Shown: positions 823 through 55,702, counted from the stretch's first letter. The stretch is DNA of 64,000 nucleotides from Octopus sinensis (GCF_006345805.1 NC_043014.1:53754001-53818000); one strand, 5' to 3'. Notes: generated by a model from the sequence alone, not told the origin. Numbers and translations: made by a program.

Positions 823-43393
<42,571 letters not shown>

Positions 43394-44595: not shown

Positions 44596-45114
44596 ATGAA
44601 CCGAGCCTGCCCACCTCCTCTTCTTTGCCAAACTTGCCATAAACAGATCACTTGTTGTATGACACAAAACTATGAATCAAACAAAGGTGCCCATCTTTAA
44701 AGGGTCTTCTCTAATTTCATGTGGAAACCATTTTAGTTTTATTCCAAACATCAGCTTAAGGAAAGAGTTAATTACTTCAAGCTCTGAATTATTTTCAAAA
44801 TGAATTGAAATCCTAGAGATATGGTATCAGAGAGCTGATAATACAAGGGTCGGAACTAACTCCTGTACATTTTCTAAGATGGCAGAAATGTCAGAACATT
44901 GGGGAAACTGGTTGGCAACATTTATTCTGGGTTTTTAGATTCTGAGTTCAGACACTGCCAAGAACCACTAGTGTAGCCAGAGGGTGTGCTGCTTAGGGTG
45001 GTTCTTCCGTTTGCTACCCACCAACCCCACAAAGAAATATATTTTGTGTCATACAACAAGTGGTCTGTTTATGGCAGTTCGGCAAAGAAGAGGAGGTGGG
45101 CAGGCTTGGTTCAT
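44596..45114. repeat. Inverted repeat, 73-bp arms (44596-44669, 45042-45114)
   Basis: About 4 differences between arms. Confidence 0.88.
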
Positions 45115-45245
45115 CATTGCCTCCATCTTAAACTCTTTCAGTTGTCAAAGCAACGAGCTGCCTCTTCCTGCAGAGACACATCAACAATAATAACAACAAC
45201 AATAAAATTTAAGATTTTTTTGTATTTTGAAAAACAAAGAATAAA

Positions 45246-45806
<561 letters not shown>

Positions 45807-46258
45807 GTAATAATAAAAAAAATTTCACATTTGCAAAGAGTGAAAAATAGAAGCACAAGATTTTGTGTTTGTTGTTTGGAGTTGTTCATTGCTGCAGCAG
45901 GGGAGAGTCCTGCAGATTGTTGTCGGCCAAGCAGACAGTCTGCTCTCTGATTGCATCAATACCACTACCACAATTACTACTACTACTATTACTACTGCTA
46001 CTACTGCAAGCGGTTAAGTCTTTCCCTCTGTTATTTTGGTCAATCTCTTTGTTCGTTCGGTGAGTAGTAGTACCAGCTTTAACACCAGCTGAGTTACTAC
46101 TACTACTACAACTACTATTACTACTACTACTACTATTGTCAATGCTGTGGCTGCTGAGTCCACTGTTACCACCACGACCAGTGGTGGGGCGGTGGTGGTG
46201 GTGTTGTTGTTGTTGTTGCTGATGATGATGGAAGACGTTGTAATGGCAGTGGTGGTGG

Positions 46259-46407
46259 TCATGATGGTGGAAGCATTGATGTTGCTATTGTGAATGAACC
46301 TGGATGCTTCCGAGATGTTTCAAGAGAAGTGTGACCAGCAATGTGATCCAAACGGAATTTGTCCAGGGATGCGGAAGCATTGACAATATGGCCATCATTA
46401 AGAACAA
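46259..46407 (-). CDS. PKNOX: PKNOX last coding exon (phase-1 reading ends ...TSMLPPS*; see frameshift finding)
   Basis: Strong acceptor tttctttctttttcag; (F)[24 protein letters not shown]...MLPPS-TGA. Confidence 0.7.
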
Positions 46408-49400
46408 CTGAAAAAGAAAGAAAAATAAACAGGATTTAGTGGAATACTCTGCCCCTTTGTTTCAATTAACTTTCAAAATATTCAAGAATTTACAAATTTA
46501 AACAGGTTTTGGGAATACAAATTAACATGAAAGCTTTTTATCTAGAACAGTTTAAAATGGGAAGTTTGTACAATGGAGTCAGGGGTGGTCTTAGGCAGTT
46601 TGATATTAAAGAGGTTGAATAGTTTCTGTGGAGTTCTCCCCATCAAACCAGGTACAGGCATTATAGTAATGCTATTTTAAGCATTGTTTTCATGCAGATG
46701 GCAGCCTTCAGTACATCTACTTTTACTACTTACCACTGCAAGTACAATGAAGAGGTTTAATAAGACAGGAACATATCTATAGTTATTAATAGTTATTGCC
46801 AAACTAATATGGCAGTCCATAAATATAAGACTAAAGCTGTCGCTGATTAGCTCCAAGAGGCCATCGCCTCTAGCTAGCTATATGACACACGAACCTTCGA
46901 AGGTTGTAATGGACGCAGGTTCGTGTGTCAAATAGCTAGCTTGAGGCGGTGGCCTCTTGGAGCTAATCAGCGACAGCTTTAGTCTTATATTTATGGACTG
47001 CCATATTAGTTTGGCAATAACTATTAATATCCAGTAACGCTGCCGTAATCTCCTTTAGAGAGACTTAGTAATTTTAATATTTCTATTATATCTATAGTTG
47101 CTTCCCATATTTGCTGGAATAATTAAAATAACATTAGTCATTGAACTTAAATGACTGTCTTTACCTCAAAGAATATATAAGAAAATGGCTTGTGAAGTTG
47201 TTTGTAGCTAAAACTGAAATTATTGTCTACTATAAGACATTTTCACAAAGTAGAATCCCCATGGAAAAAGATATTTTTCAGTATGTAAACACTAAACACT
47301 TTCTCTTTCCTCTTGATTCCTAAAGTTCTATCGAAAGAAGAAAACAAACCATTCCATGAACTTTCTCCAGATTGTAAATATTTTCATCTTTAATGAAATA
47401 CCTCACTTCGTAAAATAAGTTACAGGTGATATCATGCTGACAATTTCTAAAAAGAATGAAACAGTATTCATCATCATCATCATCATCATTTAACATCCAC
47501 TTTCCATGCTGGCATGGGAGGATGGTTTGACTAGGGAATGGCAAGCCAGGAGGCTGCCCCAGGCTCCAATCTGATCTGGGAAGGTTTCTACAGATGGATG
47601 CCCTTCTTAACACCAACTGCTCCAAGATTGTAGTGGGTGCTTTTATGTGCCACTGGCACGGGTCCATTCAGGTGGCACTCGCATGGAACCAGATGGGCGA
47701 TCAATGGGAAATTGTAAGAACTTTGTAAAAAGTAAGCAAAAGAAAAATTAAATGTGTGACATCTGTGCATCTTTTTCCTTGTAATTCCTTCATTTCGAAT
47801 ACAAATTTCTAATTCCACCAAATATTATAAAGAAATTATTTCTCTTGTAATAACTGTCATCACTAAGGAAGCCATGTGAATTTGAAAAGTTCATCCATCT
47901 TCAGAATCTATAAAACTATTTGTGTTGAGCAACAGCAACCATTGGAAGATTCTGACACACATAAAAACAAATAAATACATAAAATAAATGAAAGATCCTC
48001 AATAGGGTTGTGTAACCTACTTGAAATAGCAGCCAAATCTCCCTTAAATCATACCACACCATTTGTAAAAGTGAATGCAGTATTTGTATCCAGGATAATA
48101 TCATAAGTTTTAAGCCTGTCACAACAGGGCCATTAGACAGGAGCTTAACTTGATTTCTATGGTGTAGAAGCAATTAAAAGTATAATACCCACCCCCTCAC
48201 CACAACCACCACTGAACATGATGTCTATCTATTGTAGGTTTAACCTCAAGTTGGTACTTTTTTTTTTTCATTTGAGAGGACTGGAGTGAGATGAAAATGA
48301 AGTATTTTGTTGAAGAACAGATCACACTGCTGAGTGTGGGAATCAAAACCATGGACTTGCAACTGGGTGCCTCACCCCTACAAGAAATTCAACTTACAAG
48401 TTGCTGTTTCCATATTGGGTAGCACTATGGTTTGATTGGACGGCTGGCTTGATGTGGCTAAAGGGCTGCTCTCATTGGATGCTCCATCCCCAATGCCATC
48501 AGCATCTCCAATAGACAGAGGACTGGAGCTACCCGAAAGGTTACCATCGAGAGTTGTGGGTATCTGGGGACGTAGATTGGCAATATTTTCAGGCCAGAAC
48601 CTTTGAAGGGGTCGATTGGGTGGTTTATTTTTCTTCACTTTGGCTTGGTCAGGATTGCTGGCATCCAGCATCGGCTGCAAAATACGTCGACGAGCGTTGA
48701 TGAACCTGAAAAGAGTCAGAGAGAAAGCAAACAAAGAACTGAGTTCAAAAATTGTTTTCTCTCAAAGAATCAGTCTTGAAACACAAGATTCATCTTCCCC
48801 CGTCTCCATGCCCACCATGGCATACATTCTCATCCAAGATCGTTTTAAGATATTCTTTTCCATACTTGTCTGGGTCACACAGGAGTATGCTGAGGCAGAT
48901 ATCTTTCCTGTCACTGATACCACCCCACCCTGTTTCCAAAGGGGCTAAGAATCTCCCAGTTTATCAAACAACAACCCAGACATGTTTACAAACGACACCA
49001 TATGAACAATCCTTTTGTCTACAGAGTGCAACCTGTCAACAGATGTTGAGAAACTGAGGTCACACTTTCACAGGAACCAATTCTCTTGGACTCTTGTTTT
49101 TCATGAACAAAAAGAATTCTTTCAAATTCAGAAGTCAACCAATGAAAGCCAAATGGCTTCCTTCTTCAATTCTTTGCTTCTTCTCAGCACAAGAAACAGG
49201 GGAAGTGTTTACCATTCATTACTTTATGATACAGTTTTCATTACCAAAATCATATTTTCAATTAAAGTTGATACTTTAGTGACAAGGAGGGAAGCGGTGG
49301 ATGCCCATAGAGGGAGCCTCAGTATGGAACTCCATAAATTACAATTTTTGCATTCTGAGATTTGAGACTGAAGCTGTTGTTATGGTTAAAAGAGGTGCTA

Positions 49401-52400
49401 AGGTGAATGCCACAATATTGATAGTAATGAAATTGAGAAACAAATATAAATTTCATTTAAAAGGAAGTTATTCTAGAAAATCTAGGAAAGTTCTCCGAGC
49501 CATGATAGATGCTGCTGATCATTGGGATGTCCGAATGTTTATGATTTGGTTCTCAAAGATTTATCTATTAATATGTTGAAAAAAACCCAAAAAGACAGGA
49601 CCCTACAGCCAGCTGGGAAAGGGCCATTGTCAATATGAAAAAACAAAAGGTGTAAGAGTACCCAGTATAAAACCATGGGGCACAGGAGATGCAATGAGAG
49701 GCAGGCAGAGGAGATGATTAATTTAGGATAACAATAAAATAGTTTTTTAATCATTGAGCTTACCAGTTGTTGACTTGAAGTAATGTCAGGTTTGTCTGGG
49801 CTGCAATTTGTCTTTTTTCGTCTTCTGAAGGATATGGATGCTTGAGAAATGAAACAAATTTGACGCATCAGGAATTGAAACATTTGTAAGAGGTGAAAAA
49901 AGTGACCAGCTGCACAACTGAAAATGCATTTCATTTACAAATTGCTATTTCTTTGTTTCAGTTCTTTTGGTAGTATTTTTGTTATTTTGAAAATAACTCT
50001 ACATTTTCAATGGTTATGTGGTTAAAACATTTGCTCCACAACCATTTTTTTGTGGGTTTGGTCCTCCTTGAGGTGTCGCAGAAATCTGGACAATGTAAAC
50101 ATACACACATGTATGTACTGGTTTCAGGCACTGACCACACTGGAGCACTGCCTTGAATGTTTTAGTTGATCAAATGATCTACCACAAAATTCTGGTCCAT
50201 TTTTGTTGAAATGCTAAATTACAAAGACATAAACTAACACCAGCCATTGGTGTCCTGCAAAGGCCAGATACGAAGAGAAACAAACACACACCTTCTTAAG
50301 AGGTTGTCAGGGTTGATCAGAAGGGAGCTACACAGGACAACAAGGGAAATTATCAATGTAAGGCTTTTAAAAGTAAAAGTAAATAAAGGATCGAAAGGAA
50401 TTTAAAATGGACACTAAACCAAATACAAACCACAATATTCTGAAAGAGCCAGGATCTCATGATTTTAGTTGCCGTCTTGGGCAGAATTCCTCTTTTAGTT
50501 TTTCTTTTACAAATCATATCTTCATCATCTGAACCAAGTTGAGCAAGGTTTCCCATGGGAGTGATCTGGGTTGATGCTGACAACAGACAACAGAAGAAGA
50601 ATGCACAGAGATAGAAAAGCAAAACAGACAGGGAGATGAATTAACAGATAGGTGAATCCTTTAACATAGATAAGTAATAGTAATGAAAAGAGTCAGTCAA
50701 ACAGACAGACAATCAAAGAAGAAGAAAACTGAAGAATATTGTTGCATTTACCTGGAGTCGGTGGAGCAGAAGTAACAGGGATTTGTCCGATGATGTTGGG
50801 AGTTCCAACAACACCAATCTGTGACAAGGGGGTACTACCATGAATAAGAGGTGAACCACTTGCCACTTGGTTAGGAAGTGAAGCAGTTCGAATCTGAAAG
50901 AGTAACAGACGGGGAGAGTTCATTCAAAGACAAAATGGGGAAGATTCTTCAAGGATTCTATCTACTAACAAGAGTAACAAGAACATTAACCTCACAAAGT
51001 ACCCCACCTCTTCTCTCTCTTGTACGTGGTATTTAATTATAATACACTGCTCCTAAATATACCCCATTAAAATGACCATCACCGCTGAATGCTGGTGTTC
51101 AAGGAATCTTCACAAAAGAATAAATCACTAATCATGTCTGCTGCACTAATTGTCTTTAAGGGACAAGATCCACCCTTATTAACCAAAGTTAGTTGCCCAA
51201 AATTTTGGTTATTGTGGTTATCTCCCTTGTTGGATGATTTTCAGACTTTTAAACATCCCATGATGGAAGTTTTTGTTTACTAATCGCATGAATAATCTCA
51301 GATGATTAAAGTTTTTTTTTAATTCACTGTACTAAATAAGTGAGACTATACTATGATTAAAAAAAAAAAGAGTAGGCTTTTCCAGTTGAGAACAATTTGT
51401 GTGCAAAACCATTCTCATTGGCCCTGCTTCGAGAAAACCAAATTTATGAGAAACTTCAATGTTTTGAGTCGTTTGAGAGACTCAAGTAATTGGTGTCTGC
51501 TTGCGCATGGGTGATGCTTTGCCCCAAGTGAATGGGATCTAAGCAGATGCAATCTTTGAGTTGAGAGAAACTATACTTGAACACAGATCAGAGAATGTGA
51601 ACAATAAAGCAAAGTGTACAAACCTGAATTGGCTGTGCAACAATACCTTGTGGTGTTTGCACCATTTGATACACAGTTCCGCCAGATACAATCTGCCCCT
51701 GTCCTAAGGAACCCATTGAAAGGGCAGCTGGTTGCGCAGCAGCAGCGGCTAAACCCTGCTGGATGAGGACATTGTTGGCTGCCATTGAGGCAACCACTTG
51801 CTGCTGCATCTGCAACTGACCCTGGAGTGAAACAGCAGCGGCAGCAGCTGCAGCTAGGCTATTATTGTTGGTGGTGGTGGTCGTGGTGGTGCTGGTGGTG
51901 CTGGTGCTATGATGGTGGTGGTTGCTGGTGCTACTTCTGCTACCACCACCACCACCACCACCGCCGCCGCCGCTGCTGCTGCTGCTTGTGGTGGTGGTGA
52001 TGCCAGTGGTTCCAGGGGCCGACGATGGCCCTGTTGTAGTTGGAGTTAGCTGTGAGGAACTGGTGCTGAGAGAAGGAGTGACATTCCCAGAGTTGCTGCC
52101 ACTACTGCTGCTCATTGAACCATCAAAATTGGGGGTTGGCGAGTGCACCTCGGTGCGCAGCAGGTGCTCGCTCTGCATCTTGCTTTTCAGGCATGTTATG
52201 TAACGGTGGCAGAAATCCTTGCACAACTCATTCACTTTCTCCAACTCCAGCAGATGGATGCGTAACACCTGAATAGCTTTCAGCATCTGAAGAAGAAGAG
52301 GGAGAAGAGAAACATTAGTTCAGCAGGGGACACACGGTGGGTTCAGCAGCAGGGGACTTTGCTTCTAACACTTCACAACCCATGTTTCTGCTCCAATAAT

Positions 52401-52654: not shown

Positions 52655-54205
52655 CTTTCAAAGAGGAAGAATTTACGGATTTTTTCTCTTACAAGGTTTT
52701 TCACGCTGACTACTGATAATTTCTTTTAAAGATTTTATCCTCAATTGTTAATTTATATATATATATATATCTAATTAGAAGTTTTGTTAAGCTCATGAAG
52801 GGATGGTTTCATCCAAGAAAATACTGGTTCAATACCAAGTGTTTTGTGGAACTAATTTCCTTAAAATAATAGGTGTATATATATAAACAGATAGCTTATA
52901 TTCATATAAAAGAAGAAAAAGAAAAAAAATGGAGATTGAGAAATTAATAATTGTTTATTATTAACAGCATTATTAAGTAGCTTGCTAACCAACCACATGG
53001 TTCCGGGTTCAGTCCCACTGTGTGGCATCTTGGGCAAGTGTCTTCTGCTATAGCCCTGGGCTGACCAATGCCTTGTGAGTGGATTTGGTAGACGGAAACT
53101 GAAAGAAGCCTGTCGTATATATGTATATATATGTATATATGTGTATGTGTGTGTGTTTGTTTGTGTGTGTGTGTTTGTCCCCCTAGCATTGCTTGACAAC
53201 CGATGCTGGTGTGTTTACGTCCCTGTCACTTAGCGGTTCGGCAAAAAGAGACTGATAGAATAAGTACTGGGCTTACAAAGAATAAGTTCCGGGGTCGATT
53301 TGCTCGACTAAAGGCGGTGCTCCAGCATGGCCGCAGTCAAATGACTGAAACAAGTAAAGAGAGCAAATTAATCATCTTTGCTTACAGCTGTTTCAGTAAA
53401 TATTTATATGACCTGAGCATAAAATCTTCAGAGGGGAAAAAAATATACTCTTGGATGTTTTATATGTGTTTATGGATTCATTAAAGCAGACTGAATGATA
53501 CGGTTTATGATTTTTTTTGTTATCTGTTCAGGTTAGGAGTTTACAGGTTGATTGGAACTTACCAAACTATCCAATTCTGTGTCATCACTGAAAAAAGGAT
53601 TACGGTCCTTCTCCTGGTGTTGCACAAAAGCCTGAATGTCAACATCGAAATTGTCTCCTGCTGGACAATCAGGGGTTTGAGTTGCACGTTCACATTTCTC
53701 AAATAACAGAGCCATCAAAGGAAAGAGGGGGTGCCTGGTTCAATACAAAGCAAATAAACAATCTCACATTTAATATAAAATTAATCACATATTTAATACA
53801 GACTTACAGCCCTCATCTCTCTGAAAGCCTTGCATGTCGGGACATGTCACTATACCTGTAGTACCCTATGGATTCTTGACCTAGGGGCCACATATCTCGT
53901 ACCTTTATTACAAAACCATCATCATTACTATGTTTCGTTTTTTTTTTCCGTGCTTCCATGGTATCTCACCACTTGTGGTCCCCTTATACTTCATATTGTA
54001 TCCCTACTACTGTTCCTTGTCACCTCCTCCTCCCTTTCTTTCCTTCCCCTAAATTGACGTTTACTGCACCCAACTTTATCCCCATTTCTAATCATTTGTC
54101 ACTCTTTTCACACCCTACTGCACGCACTGACCCACCCACACGTTTCTGTTCCTTTACCCTGTTCTCCCTTTCCTATCCACCTTGTACCTTAACCTCACAT
54201 CCCGC

Positions 54206-54238
<33 letters not shown>

Positions 54239-55702
54239 CAGACGAGGAAGTCATGTATCCACCTCTTCAGCAAGACTCTCACTCCTGCCTCCCCATCATA
54301 CTTTCGTATCCCTCGTTACTATATTCCACTTGGTTGAGGAATCTTGTCTTTTTAGACCTGGGTGACCTCCCCAGTGCTGCCACAAAAACCATCCAGTACA
54401 CTCTGTGAAGCAGCTGGCCTTCGGAGAGGTGTCCAGATGTAGAAATCAAGCTGAAGCAGACACTGGAACTTGGTGCAGCCCTTCAGCTCATCACTTCATG
54501 CCAAACTGTCCAACCCATTTGAACAGGTGTTAAATGATGATGATGATGATGATGATGATGAAATATGAAAATACTGGTTTGTTTGTTGAGATGAGATATT
54601 GAAAAAGAAGCTGGCATACCGACAAATTGCTTTCTTCTCATGTTCAAGACTGTGGGATTCAGAACCCTGTTGTCCACTGCTAGTCGTTTGTTGAGTAATC
54701 ACAGACGTTGTGGTGCTTGTACCACTGCTGGAAGTGCTACTGGAAAACACACGATTAAAACAATGAGAAACATCAAATGATTTTGTATGGATGAGGGGAT
54801 ACACATATGAAGAGGAAGGAAAAATTAAAATTCTCTTGTTTTTAGGAAAAAATATTCATAATAAAATGAAACAGATGTATTTCTGATTTCACAATGTCCT
54901 CTTCAGCTTCATTACCTCAATCCTCTTCCCCATGTCTCATCCTTCCTTTAATATTTGCTGTAGGTTCTCATTACACAGCCAGCCTTTAATAGTTTTCTTC
55001 ATTAATTTACATAACTTTGCTGTGTATTCAATGATCAAACTCACCAGGTCGATATCTTTTATATCCTCGCAAAGAACAGTGGTTGTCGTCAGCATAATTA
55101 AGACAAATAAGTGAACAGTTCAGCTCTTGTCTCCTCAACTGTTTATCTTTGTACACTCAACAGTTAATAGGTACCATGAAGAGGAGGTGCCTTTCAAAGA
55201 ATTAGAATTTGCCTCTTACCCAGAGAAAGAAAACAAAAAATTTAAGCTTAATGTCCAGAGGATAGATGTTCTGGAGATGAAGGACTGAACAAAATTATTT
55301 GAGCAAAGGTAGAAAGGAAGAGAGATAAGAGAAGGAGAGACAGATGTGTCCAAGGTGGACTTAGGTAAATGTGGTAAGTAACTTGCTATTTCAGAGTAGA
55401 AGGTTATATTTTGTTGTCTTAATCTGTAGAATGTTTTAGATTGTAAATAGCATCAATTTAAAACCTTGGCCAGTTACATCTTACTTAGACTGAGTTTTCA
55501 TATAGAATTACAATGAAAAGAGAAGATGGAACTTTCATGCCTTTCCTAATGCCATCATTAGACACATACAGCTCTTGCTAAATATCTTTAAAAAATATAT
55601 AAATTTGATTTAAATATAAGAAAGAAAAGAAGACCTTTACCTTTTCGATTCTGGTAGATTAGGGGACGCTGTGGGTGACACAATGTGAGTAGTTGCCAAC
55701 AT
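46259..55702 (-). CDS. PKNOX: PKNOX/PREP TALE-class homeobox protein, 9 coding exons, 612 aa as read
   Basis: MEINOX/HR1-HR2 ([16 protein letters not shown]; [26 protein letters not shown]), TALE homeodomain ([44 protein letters not shown]) and post-[10 protein letters not shown] motif are PKNOX-type, not MEIS-type. Exons sum to 1839 nt in phase. Confidence 0.92.
46785..47028. repeat. Fold-back inverted repeat, about 112-bp arms, 20-nt loop
   Basis: 46785-46896 vs 46917-47028, about 3 mismatches. Confidence 0.92.
48398..48705 (-). CDS. PKNOX: PKNOX coding exon 8 (helix 3 and post-HD region)
   Basis: (W)[42 protein letters not shown]...NMETAT+T|gtaagt; 3' end could instead be an internal phase-1 donor near 48543. 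Confidence 0.9.
49764..49840 (-). CDS. PKNOX: PKNOX coding exon 7 (TALE loop PYP, helix 2)
   Basis: [25 protein letters not shown]+W; gtaagc donor. Confidence 0.97.
50431..50576 (-). CDS. PKNOX: PKNOX coding exon 6 (homeodomain N-arm, helix 1)
   Basis: (A)[48 protein letters not shown]. Confidence 0.95.
50752..50893 (-). CDS. PKNOX: PKNOX coding exon 5
   Basis: [47 protein letters not shown]; tttcag|...|gtaaat; phases 0/1 fit. Confidence 0.87.
51624..52286 (-). CDS. PKNOX: PKNOX coding exon 4 (MEINOX-B/HR2 plus long low-complexity region)
   Basis: [40 protein letters not shown]...[20 protein letters not shown]; 221 codons. Confidence 0.95.
52975..53360 (+). mobile_element. tRNA-derived SINE with CORE-like segment (GGCATCTTGGGCAAGTGTCTT); copies at 31455-31640 and 58675-59030
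   Basis: Shared ggttcagtcccactgtgtggcac..gggcaagtgtcttct..gtgagtggatttggtagacggaaact and 3' cagcatggccgcagtcaaatgactgaaacaag. Confidence 0.8.
53563..53734 (-). CDS. PKNOX: PKNOX coding exon 3 (MEINOX-A/HR1)
   Basis: (R)[57 protein letters not shown]|gtaagt. Confidence 0.96.
54620..54739 (-). CDS. PKNOX: PKNOX coding exon 2
   Basis: (S)[39 protein letters not shown]+R; CAGTAG acceptor; gtatgc donor. Confidence 0.88.

What the first reader, a model, noticed from the sequence alone, without database searches (positions are those of the whole stretch)
45886..46290. PKNOX stop codon sits in a TCA-TGA context with a 124-codon open frame exactly +1 behind it
Seen: the phase-matched last exon ends ...CTT CCA CCA TCA TGA (46273-46259). 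Skipping one base gives GAC CAC CAC..., a stop-free frame of 124 codons to TGA 45888-45886: [30 protein letters not shown]...KAGTTTHRTNKEIDQNNRGKDL...[24 protein letters not shown]. It has non-repeat, protein-like blocks and resembles the His/Ser-rich style of exon 4. A TAG at 46287 confines any shift to 24 nt. Established: ornithine decarboxylase antizyme uses +1 frameshifting at UCC-UGA. Inference, three options: programmed +1 frameshift giving short (612 aa) and long (about 736 aa) PREP isoforms, a 1-nt assembly error (e.g. in the CC of CTT CCA), or a recent truncating mutation. Trinucleotide repeats keep two of three frames open, so chance is also possible.
Basis: partly seen in the sequence, partly recalled or inferred. 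Interest (0 to 1): 0.72.

Follow-up and report, generated by a model that had tools for sequence, protein, structure and literature searches.

The report
Broken reading frame in octopus PKNOX tail
The open frame behind the annotated stop of the octopus PKNOX (Prep) homeobox gene looks like the gene's real C-terminal tail, cut off by small frame breaks that are most likely assembly errors, so this is a gene-model problem and not a programmed ribosomal frameshift.

Summary
The phase-matched last exon ends ...CCA TCA TGA (46261-46259). The +1 frame is stop-free for 124 codons to TGA 45888-45886, and TAG 46287-46285 bounds it upstream. The window is Octopus sinensis GCA_006345805.1, and RefSeq PKNOX (611/612 aa) stops at that same TGA.

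The downstream sequence looks coding:
- 30 of its 31 stop triplets fall in one frame.
- Codon statistics favour it strongly.
- Two other cephalopod PKNOX transcripts read on about 80 aa in one continuous ORF.
- One of them ends ...NLCLGDDNSERDSSPLLD*, against octopus +1 ...[17 protein letters not shown]. That is the best match among 3235 six-frame ORFs.

Codon statistics from two training sets suggest the coding frame leaves frame 0 near 46297, about 35 nt before the TGA. It then runs in the -1 frame and enters the +1 frame at a C4 run (46189-46186). That amounts to two single-base breaks, so the TCA-TGA context would be incidental.

No frameshift-stimulating RNA was found. Relatives have no stop at this point.

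Most likely these are consensus errors in low-complexity sequence. A real recent truncation is the main rival. No independent octopod reads or sequences could be reached, so this stays unproven. Programmed +1 frameshifting is about 2%.

The parts
55641..55702 (-). PKNOX coding exon 1 (ATG at 55702; [20 protein letters not shown] plus 2 nt)
   Evidence: translation matches the N-terminus of P0001. The gene start in L005 maps to window 55702.
54620..54739 (-). coding exon 2
   Evidence: The spliced translation is identical to RefSeq P0001.
53563..53734 (-). coding exon 3 (Meis_PKNOX_N, first part)
   Evidence: Pfam PF16493 on the product.
51624..52286 (-). coding exon 4 (rest of Meis_PKNOX_N, then a Ser/Gly/Thr/Asn/His/Ala-rich low-complexity stretch)
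50752..50893 (-). coding exon 5
50431..50576 (-). coding exon 6 (homeodomain, first part)
   Evidence: PF05920/PF00046.
49764..49840 (-). coding exon 7 (homeodomain, middle)
48398..48705 (-). coding exon 8 (end of homeodomain plus linker; ends in phase 1)
   Evidence: tblastn of cephalopod relatives gives E = 1e-19.
46298..46407 (-). last exon, part read in frame 0: (F)[36 protein letters not shown]
   Evidence: It matches the TADGH/TADGQ segment of relatives. Codon score is best in frame 0.
46296..46297 (-). approximate first frame break (frame 0 to -1 frame; equivalent to one missing base somewhere in about 46303-46290)
   Evidence: Codon-usage path search gives the same site at all shift penalties from 5 to 20 bits. 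Frameshift-aware alignment to both relatives places a shift at 46293-46296. The position is approximate, and the alignment support is weak under shuffling.
46188..46295 (-). segment best read in the -1 frame: [36 protein letters not shown]
   Evidence: Codon score is +21 bits in the -1 frame against -29 in the +1 frame with the octopus-trained model, and +9 against -20 with the relative-trained model. Composition resembles the relatives' ...IIIENSNDTNNNATIINTPTTSIISTN....
46259..46261 (-). annotated stop TGA (frame 0), preceded by TCA. Probably out of the true reading frame.
46285..46287 (-). TAG that closes the +1 frame upstream
46186..46189 (-). C4 homopolymer inside the (ACC)n array, where the array changes phase; approximate second frame break (-1 to +1 frame)
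   Evidence: TRF reports indels in the 46181-46203 array. The path search puts the shift at 46187. ACC reads as Thr in the -1 frame upstream and in the +1 frame downstream.
45889..46185 (-). tail read in the +1 frame: TTGRGGNSGLSSHSIDNSSSSSNSS...KEIDQNNRGKD...[25 protein letters not shown]
   Evidence: Codon score is +52 and +24 bits for its two halves, with both other frames negative. Its end is the top match to the C-terminus of P0002 among 3235 ORFs, with shuffle p = 0.0016.
45886..45888 (-). inferred true stop codon TGA, followed by a long (TA)n microsatellite
46014..46016 (-). TAA, the only stop in the -1 frame across the tail

Best explanation
The sequence behind the annotated TGA is the genuine C-terminal tail of the Octopus sinensis PKNOX/Prep protein. 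The reference sequence carries small frame-breaking indels inside this low-complexity exon, so the RefSeq model stops early at a stop codon that is out of the real frame.

The best-supported reading path has three parts:
1. Frame 0 from 46407 to about 46298.
2. The -1 frame from about 46295 to 46188.
3. The +1 frame from 46185 to the stop at 45888-45886.

That amounts to two breaks, each equal to one missing base. One lies near 46297 and one at the C4 run 46189-46186. It would give a protein of about 737 aa in place of 612.

Shown here: the tail has a coding-like frame structure, and relatives carry a continuous longer tail. Inferred: the breaks are consensus errors of the assembly in repeat-rich sequence, and not germline changes. 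Also inferred: there are two breaks and not one. I put about 60% on two breaks and 40% on a single 1-nt event between 46284 and 46262. No ribosomal frameshifting is involved.
For: 1. Identity. The window is 100% identical over 27,742 bp to GCA_006345805.1 CM016876.1. RefSeq XP_036366962/964 end at the same TGA.
2. Stop phase. Thirty of 31 stop triplets in 46284-45889 lie in one frame, across two separate (AGT)n arrays and seven non-repeat sites. A given frame stayed open in 0.0002 of dinucleotide shuffles.
3. Codon usage. A model trained on the gene's exons 2-8 gives frame 0 +12 bits for 46405-46298, the -1 frame +21 for 46296-46188, and the +1 frame +52 and +24 for 46186-46017 and 46016-45889. 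Competing frames are negative. A model trained on the relative's CDS without its tail gives the same best frames. In a hold-out test the correct frame scored highest in 37 of 43 windows of 36 codons. The path search returns shifts at 46297 and 46187 at every penalty tried, and scores 110.8 bits before penalties against 68.8 for a single shift at the TGA.
4. Background. Only one other locus in the window, a pure microsatellite, reaches the tail's score.
5. Relatives. Two other cephalopod PKNOX transcript sets (P0002, 656 aa; P0003) run on about 80 aa past the point where the octopus model stops, in one ORF. Length variants among them are all in frame (P0002/P0125/P0132).
6. C-terminal match. 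P0002 ends NLCLGDDNSERDSSPLLD* and the octopus +1 frame ends [17 protein letters not shown]. This is rank 1 of 3235 ORFs, with shuffle p = 0.0016 (80 aa) and 0.012 (45 aa).
7. Array phase. The (ACC)n Thr-codon array changes phase exactly at the C4 run.
Against: - No independent read set or second octopod sequence could be reached, so an assembly error is not shown directly.
- RefSeq does not flag the model as low quality.
- Support from homology is modest. The tail of P0003 does not match significantly. Profiles of PKNOX C-termini from many animals do not find the octopus tail. BLASTP finds nothing.
- The frameshift-aware extension into the -1 frame gives p = 0.03 with P0002 and 0.68 with P0003. 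The -1 segment therefore rests mainly on codon and composition statistics from small training sets.
- Trinucleotide arrays mutate in steps of three, so an open frame can outlive loss of function.
Confidence: 0.6

Rival explanations
1. The frame break or breaks are real germline changes in O. sinensis, either fixed or carried by the sequenced haplotype. The protein would then truly end at ...MLPPS, lacking the ancestral tail. The open frames behind it would be a young, not yet decayed former coding sequence now serving as 3'UTR.
For: - The reference sequence as it stands, with a RefSeq model that is not flagged.
- Repeat arrays change in multiples of three, so frames persist after loss of function.
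- O. sinensis and O. vulgaris split only about 2.5 Mya (PMC10700109), which leaves little time for stops to accumulate.
- PKNOX tails evolve fast.
Against: - It would need one or two non-3n indels in a conserved developmental regulator, with no other damage in about 135 downstream codons.
- Both inferred breaks look like single missing bases, and one sits in a homopolymer inside a repeat array. From my own knowledge, that is typical of long-read consensus errors.
- Every relative found keeps a longer tail.
Confidence: 0.2
2. Programmed +1 ribosomal frameshifting at UCA-UGA, of the antizyme type. Ribosomes would skip the U of the stop and read GAC, giving a 612-aa short form and a roughly 736-aa long form.
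For: - A Ser codon (UCA) followed by UGA, with an open +1 frame that has no ATG of its own.
- The +1 frame ends in a tail that resembles the relatives' C-terminus.
Against: - No match to the antizyme frameshift element or to any Rfam family.
- The 131 nt from the site fold no better than shuffles (z = -1.0, with 27 of 200 shuffles folding at least as well).
- The other cephalopods have a continuous ORF with no stop here, so the site is not conserved.
- Codon statistics disfavour the +1 frame for the first roughly 100 nt after the TGA (-29 and -20 bits) and favour the -1 frame.
- The best path leaves frame 0 upstream of the TGA.
Confidence: 0.02
3. Chance. The region is ordinary 3'UTR made of trinucleotide repeats, which happen to leave two of three frames open, and it was never coding in octopods.
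For: - The -1 frame is also open for 101 codons.
- About a third of the region is trinucleotide array.
- Long stop-free frames occur in other microsatellites in the window.
- Database searches with the +1 piece find nothing.
Against: - The seven non-repeat stop triplets share one frame with both (AGT)n arrays.
- Non-repeat blocks score as coding under two independent codon models.
- The only equal-scoring locus in the window is a pure microsatellite.
- The end of the ORF is the best match in the window to a relative's C-terminus, and it sits directly before the stop in both.
- The annotated protein would have the shortest tail of all relatives seen.
Confidence: 0.08
4. A single 1-nt event between 46284 and 46262, and not two breaks. 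The true protein would read ...TSMLPP, then the His/Gln-rich [23 protein letters not shown]..., then the same tail. This differs from the best explanation only in where the frame breaks.
For: - It is the most economical path, with one event.
- The +1 frame is open over the whole stretch.
- A short His run exists elsewhere in the protein (NHHHHS).
- The alignment evidence for the -1 segment is weak under shuffling.
Against: - Codon scores for 46296-46188 are -29 and -20 bits in the +1 frame, against +21 and +9 in the -1 frame.
- The path search prefers two shifts even at 20 bits per shift.
- The (ACC)n array changes phase at the C4 run.
- The relatives are Asn/Thr/Ser/Ile-rich here, not His/Gln-rich.
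Confidence: 0.25

Closest known systems
Gene models truncated by small indel errors in long-read genome assemblies (the class NCBI often flags as 'LOW QUALITY PROTEIN' after correcting a frameshift)
   Same: A conserved gene stops early. The ORF continues in another frame and ends like its relatives do. The breaks equal single missing bases, one of them in a homopolymer inside low-complexity sequence.
   Different: This model is not flagged, and no reads were available here to prove the error. Frameshifts introduced through genome-guided assembly that truncate ORFs are described for another mollusc, Aplysia, in PMC9282427, not for this assembly.
Ornithine decarboxylase antizyme +1 programmed ribosomal frameshift (UCC-UGA-U with a 3' pseudoknot; Rfam has a family for the element)
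   Same: A UCN Ser codon directly before UGA, and a downstream ORF in the +1 frame without its own start codon.
   Different: There is no stimulatory element or unusual structure. The site is not conserved in relatives. The coding signal after the stop lies in the -1 frame, not the +1 frame, for about 100 nt.
PKNOX/Prep (TALE-class homeobox) proteins of other cephalopods and other bilaterians
   Same: Meis_PKNOX_N plus Homeobox_KN domains. The exon 9 start matches the relatives' TADG(H/Q) segment. The tail is low-complexity and ends in a motif like L-C-L-x-D-(D/N)-N...D-S-(S)-P-L-L.
   Different: The octopus tail is longer and richer in Ser. It lacks the acidic run of the relatives (DDDDLEEEEE). 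Only one of the two cephalopod lineages gives a significant match, and general C-terminal profiles do not detect it.
Frequent +1 frameshifting at stop codons in Euplotes (AAA-UAA/UAG); from my own knowledge
   Same: A shift at a stop codon into an open +1 frame.
   Different: That is a genome-wide property of a ciliate with altered termination. Nothing like it is known in molluscs, and the site motif differs. It was not tested beyond the points listed for antizyme.

Membership tests
PKNOX/Prep TALE homeobox gene | N-terminal Meis/PKNOX homology domain (PF16493) | tested here: met
   Precomputed Pfam hits on P0001/P0121. The spliced window translation is identical to P0001.
PKNOX/Prep TALE homeobox gene | TALE homeodomain (Homeobox_KN PF05920, WFINARRR) | tested here: met
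PKNOX/Prep TALE homeobox gene | Best matches are named PKNOX1/2 across animals | tested here: met
   One search hit list (762 proteins with E <= 0.001; the named ones are PKNOX1/2).
Antizyme-type programmed +1 frameshift | Shift site: a sense codon followed by an in-frame UGA, with an open +1 frame (canonical UCC-UGA-U) | tested here: inconclusive
   UCA-UGA-C is present and the +1 frame is open. The motif is not the canonical one, and any sense codon before a stop would look similar.
Antizyme-type programmed +1 frameshift | Stimulatory RNA element or pseudoknot just 3' of the site | tested here: not met
   No Rfam match up to E = 10. Folding z-score is -1.0.
Antizyme-type programmed +1 frameshift | Shift site and two-ORF layout conserved in orthologues | tested here: not met
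   The other cephalopod transcripts encode the region in one ORF of 656-659 aa. No octopod orthologue was available.
Antizyme-type programmed +1 frameshift | Coding signal switches from frame 0 to the +1 frame exactly at the stop | tested here: not met
   The codon path leaves frame 0 near 46297 and uses the -1 frame until about 46188.
Antizyme-type programmed +1 frameshift | Shifted product seen by ribosome profiling, peptides or a reporter assay | not testable with these tools
   Needs experiments.
Assembly consensus indel error | Reads from the same individual disagree with the consensus at the break | not testable with these tools
   No read data could be reached. Exact look-ups of small ORFs in the region found no independent contigs.
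Assembly consensus indel error | Break equals a single-base indel in a homopolymer or low-complexity run, with intact coding signal on both sides | tested here: met
   The second break lies at the C4 run inside the (ACC)n array. Coding scores are positive on both sides. The first break lies in CCAGGTTCATTC, which has only 2-nt runs.

The most novel reading that the evidence does not exclude
The reference sequence is correct, and octopus PKNOX makes two proteins from one mRNA: a 612-aa form ending at UGA, and a roughly 736-aa form made by +1 ribosomal frameshifting at UCA-UGA that restores the ancestral C-terminal motif. This would be the first animal +1 recoding site outside antizyme, and it would sit in a developmental transcription factor.
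Probability: 0.02. Interest if true: 0.85.

Novelty: not a real feature. Interest (0 to 1): 0.15.

Why it matters
If the best explanation is right, the O. sinensis RefSeq PKNOX model (XP_036366962/964) lacks about 125 residues of its real C-terminus and carries about 12 wrong ones. The same assembly underlies the gene annotation used for O. vulgaris brain studies (PMC10700109). Truncated models of this kind can therefore carry over into expression and evolutionary analyses.

The case also shows a cheap way to spot such errors without reads. A stop whose downstream sequence keeps its stop-phase and codon-usage signal in another frame is suspect.

If the breaks turn out to be real, octopuses of this lineage would have lost a tail motif that other cephalopods keep. 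That would be of modest interest for the evolution of TALE-class factors. Only the roughly 2% frameshifting reading would be a major finding.

Tried and rejected
- BLASTP of the +1 piece against P0002 and P0003 gave nothing significant. tblastn of the relatives' tails against the window was swamped by low-complexity hits without composition correction. With correction, only exon 8 and a weak frame-0 hit in exon 9 remained.
- Profiles of PKNOX C-termini, one from 95 tails and one from 13 chosen tails, scanned over all six-frame ORFs did not find the octopus tail. I therefore do not claim the pan-bilaterian ...L-x-L-D-N-S-D-S-L motif for octopus.
- The +1 piece searched alone had no hit in the 5.8-billion set. 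In the 1.84-billion representative set it hit only a 6156-aa low-complexity protein.
- Searches for other octopod PKNOX proteins or fragments found none.
- Exact look-ups of small ORFs that a gene caller might have called on independent contigs over the site (82, 97, 48 and 35 aa) were not on record.
- Two exact-pattern scans of metagenome contigs found nothing.
I call them 'other cephalopods, probably decapodiform' on similarity alone.
- I looked by eye, without any tool, for a splicing rescue through alternative acceptors or an internal intron. The AG at 46286-46285 and the AG at 46220-46219 both return to frame 0. A candidate 81-nt intron (46299-46219) keeps the frame. An AG at 46308-46307 would join exon 8 to the -1 frame, but it would delete the conserved DGH segment that relatives keep in the same ORF. 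All were rejected.
- A-to-I editing of UGA was rejected because it cannot change the frame, and frame 0 stops again 31 codons on.
- The 40-nt insert of the relatives' split transcripts resembles the octopus intron end no more than background does.

The pieces were searched apart.

Full report
**What the window is**

The window matches Octopus sinensis assembly GCA_006345805.1, chromosome CM016876.1, with 100% identity over 27,742 bp and no gaps. Window coordinate x corresponds to record position 53,754,000 + x.

On the minus strand lies a PKNOX/Prep TALE homeobox gene. I rebuilt coding exons 2-9 from splice sites and exon 1 from the gene start. The spliced translation is identical to RefSeq XP_036366964 (P0001, 611 aa). 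Isoform X1 is 612 aa (P0121). The annotated CDS ends at window 46259.

**Checking the observation**

The last exon starts at 46407, after ...ctttttcag. Exon 8 ends in phase 1, so the frame is F-VLNDGHIV...[16 protein letters not shown], with the TGA at 46261-46259.

The +1 frame is open from 46284 to 45889 and ends at TGA 45888-45886. That is 124 codons after the annotated stop. TAG 46287-46285 closes it upstream.

The -1 frame is also open for 101 codons, 46319-46017.

**Is it more than chance?**

Yes, on three counts.
- Of the 31 stop triplets in 46284-45889, 30 lie in frame 0, one in the -1 frame and none in the +1 frame.
- The trinucleotide arrays found by TRF cover about a third of the region. 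The seven frame-0 stops outside them share their phase with both (AGT)n arrays. No frame-breaking indel therefore separates these blocks.
- A given frame stayed open in 0.0002 of 5000 dinucleotide shuffles.

I also scored every 99-codon window of the 64 kb, on both strands and in all frames, with a codon model trained on the gene's own upstream exons. Only one other locus is stop-free and scores as high as the tail. It is a pure microsatellite near 10.2-10.6 kb.

**Relatives**

A search with the C-terminal region found the O. sinensis proteins and two sets of transcript-derived proteins from public read assemblies. These are P0002 (656 aa) and P0003 (352 aa, C-terminal half). They share 60% and 53% identity with octopus in this region, against 44-46% for the other molluscs and the nemerteans whose match covers a similar share of the region. 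They therefore come from other cephalopods, though I could not name the species.

Both align with the frame-0 start of the octopus last exon (TADGH/TADGQ against LNDGH). Both then continue for about 80 more residues in one ORF. Length variants within P0002's cluster differ only by whole codons.

P0002 ends ...NLCLGDDNSERDSSPLLD*, and the octopus +1 frame ends ...[17 protein letters not shown]. In a Smith-Waterman scan of P0002's last 30 or 18 residues over all 3235 six-frame ORFs of the window, the +1 ORF ranked first. Shuffling the +1 ORF gave p = 0.0016 with the last 80 residues and 0.012 with the last 45.

The limits of this evidence are plain:
- P0003's tail does not match significantly.
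- BLASTP sees nothing.
- Profiles built from PKNOX C-termini of many animals do not find the octopus tail.
- The +1 piece alone has no relatives in either large protein set.

**Where the frame really changes**

A codon-usage log-odds model was trained on octopus exons 2-8, leaving out the last exon. It gives the following, in bits:

| Segment | Frame 0 | -1 frame | +1 frame |
|---|---|---|---|
| 46405-46298 | +12 | -30 | -2 |
| 46296-46188 | -13 | +21 | -29 |
| 46186-46017 | -95 | -26 | +52 |
| 46016-45889 | -53 | -29 | +24 |

A model trained on the relative's CDS without its last 120 codons gives the same best frame in all four segments. In a hold-out test on known exons, the true frame scored highest in 37 of 43 windows of 36 codons.

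A path search that allows frame shifts at a cost returns the same two shifts, at 46297 and 46187, for every cost from 5 to 20 bits. It scores 110.8 bits before costs, against 68.8 for a single shift at the TGA.

The second site falls on a C4 run (46189-46186) inside an (ACC)n array. TRF reports indels in that array. ACC reads as Thr in the -1 frame before the run and as Thr in the +1 frame after it.

A frameshift-aware alignment of both relatives to the DNA also moves from frame 0 to the -1 frame at 46293-46296. It pairs IIIENSND.../IIIDNSND... with (F)IHNSNIN.... Under shuffling this extension is only weakly supported, with p = 0.03 for P0002 and 0.68 for P0003. It mostly reflects shared Asn/Thr/Ser/Ile-rich composition.

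The three pieces, each translated on its own, are:
- [36 protein letters not shown]
- [36 protein letters not shown]
- TTGRGG...[16 protein letters not shown]

Each break equals one missing base, or two extra.

I put about 60% on this two-break path and 40% on a single event between 46284 and 46262. Under the two-break path the TGA at 46261 is out of frame, and its TCA-TGA context is incidental.

**Programmed frameshifting**

- Rfam at a permissive threshold finds no antizyme element or any other credible family in 45700-46600.
- The 131 nt from the site fold with a z-score of -1.0.
- The relatives have no stop or shift here.
- The +1 frame is the worst-scoring frame for the first roughly 100 nt after the TGA.
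- I saw no standard slippery heptamer at either inferred break. This was read by eye and was not a tool result.

I rate this reading at about 2%.

**Error or real mutation?**

This could not be tested. No other octopod PKNOX sequence or independent contig over the exon could be reached:
- protein searches;
- exact look-ups;
- metagenome scans.

I favour consensus error for four reasons. Both breaks are single-base events close together in low-complexity sequence. One sits in a homopolymer. About 135 codons downstream carry no other damage. The gene is a conserved developmental regulator whose relatives all keep a longer tail.

My recollection that this assembly was built from noisy PacBio long reads is background knowledge only. 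The held O. vulgaris genome paper cites the assembly (Li et al. 2020) and gives its contiguity and BUSCO values, not its per-base accuracy (PMC10700109).

A real, recent truncation stays a serious rival at about 20%. [quoted passage not shown]

**Verdict**

The sequence behind the stop is very probably coding sequence of the same gene. The break is most likely an artefact, possibly two artefacts, and a real truncation is less likely. The frameshifting interpretation is not supported. Interest is low, apart from correcting the gene model.

Noticed in passing
L006-L008 (insert at L006:1225-1264) and L003:42-2160: Many transcript contigs of the other cephalopods carry a 40-nt insert exactly at the exon 4/5 junction, after ...VAQPIQ. 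It splits PKNOX into a 342-aa product with only the Meis_PKNOX_N domain and a separate 337-aa homeodomain ORF. The 342-aa product is on 20 contigs, whereas the full-length 656-aa product P0002 is on 2. The second lineage shows the same split (366 + 352 aa). This may be a homeodomain-less isoform or a poison exon. Its similarity to the octopus intron end is not above background.
   Followed up: partly
window 46017-46319, minus strand: The -1 frame is open for 101 codons across the annotated stop. Part of it (46295-46188) scores as coding, and the rest reads as poly-Val/Leu and scores as non-coding.
   Followed up: yes
window 36259-43393, plus strand: The neighbouring gene is an ABC transporter with two ABC_membrane plus ABC_tran units (1338 aa). 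It converges on the PKNOX 3' end and coincides with the strong negative GC skew at 36-40 kb.
   Followed up: no
window 10247-10654: A long (AAT/ATT)n microsatellite reads as poly-Asn, poly-Ile or poly-Leu/Tyr depending on frame. It is the only other place in the window that reaches the tail's codon score, which shows how simple repeats can mimic coding sequence.
   Followed up: partly
window about 45100-45830, minus strand: A very long (TA)n microsatellite, with some TG/TC variants, starts about 60 nt after the inferred true stop at 45886. It gives weak chance hits to miRNA families in Rfam.
   Followed up: no
window 46169-46181 with 46256-46268, minus strand: The minimum-energy fold pairs ACCAUCAUGACCA, which contains the annotated stop, with UGGUCGUGGUGGU about 80 nt downstream (13 bp, two of them G-U). 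The fold as a whole is no better than shuffles, so I treat this as a by-product of the CCA/UGG repeats.
   Followed up: partly
window 1568-2185 and 3633-4318, minus strand: Open frames here look like remnants of mobile elements. One is a fragment with a Cys/His-rich motif, possibly from a retroelement. The others resemble a mariner/Tc1 transposase (...[13 protein letters not shown]...). This was seen only by eye in the ORF list.
   Followed up: no
P0002, P0125, P0132 (C-terminal tails): Length variants of the relatives' tails differ only by whole Asn or Glu codons. The frame of this low-complexity tail is therefore kept in those species.
   Followed up: partly
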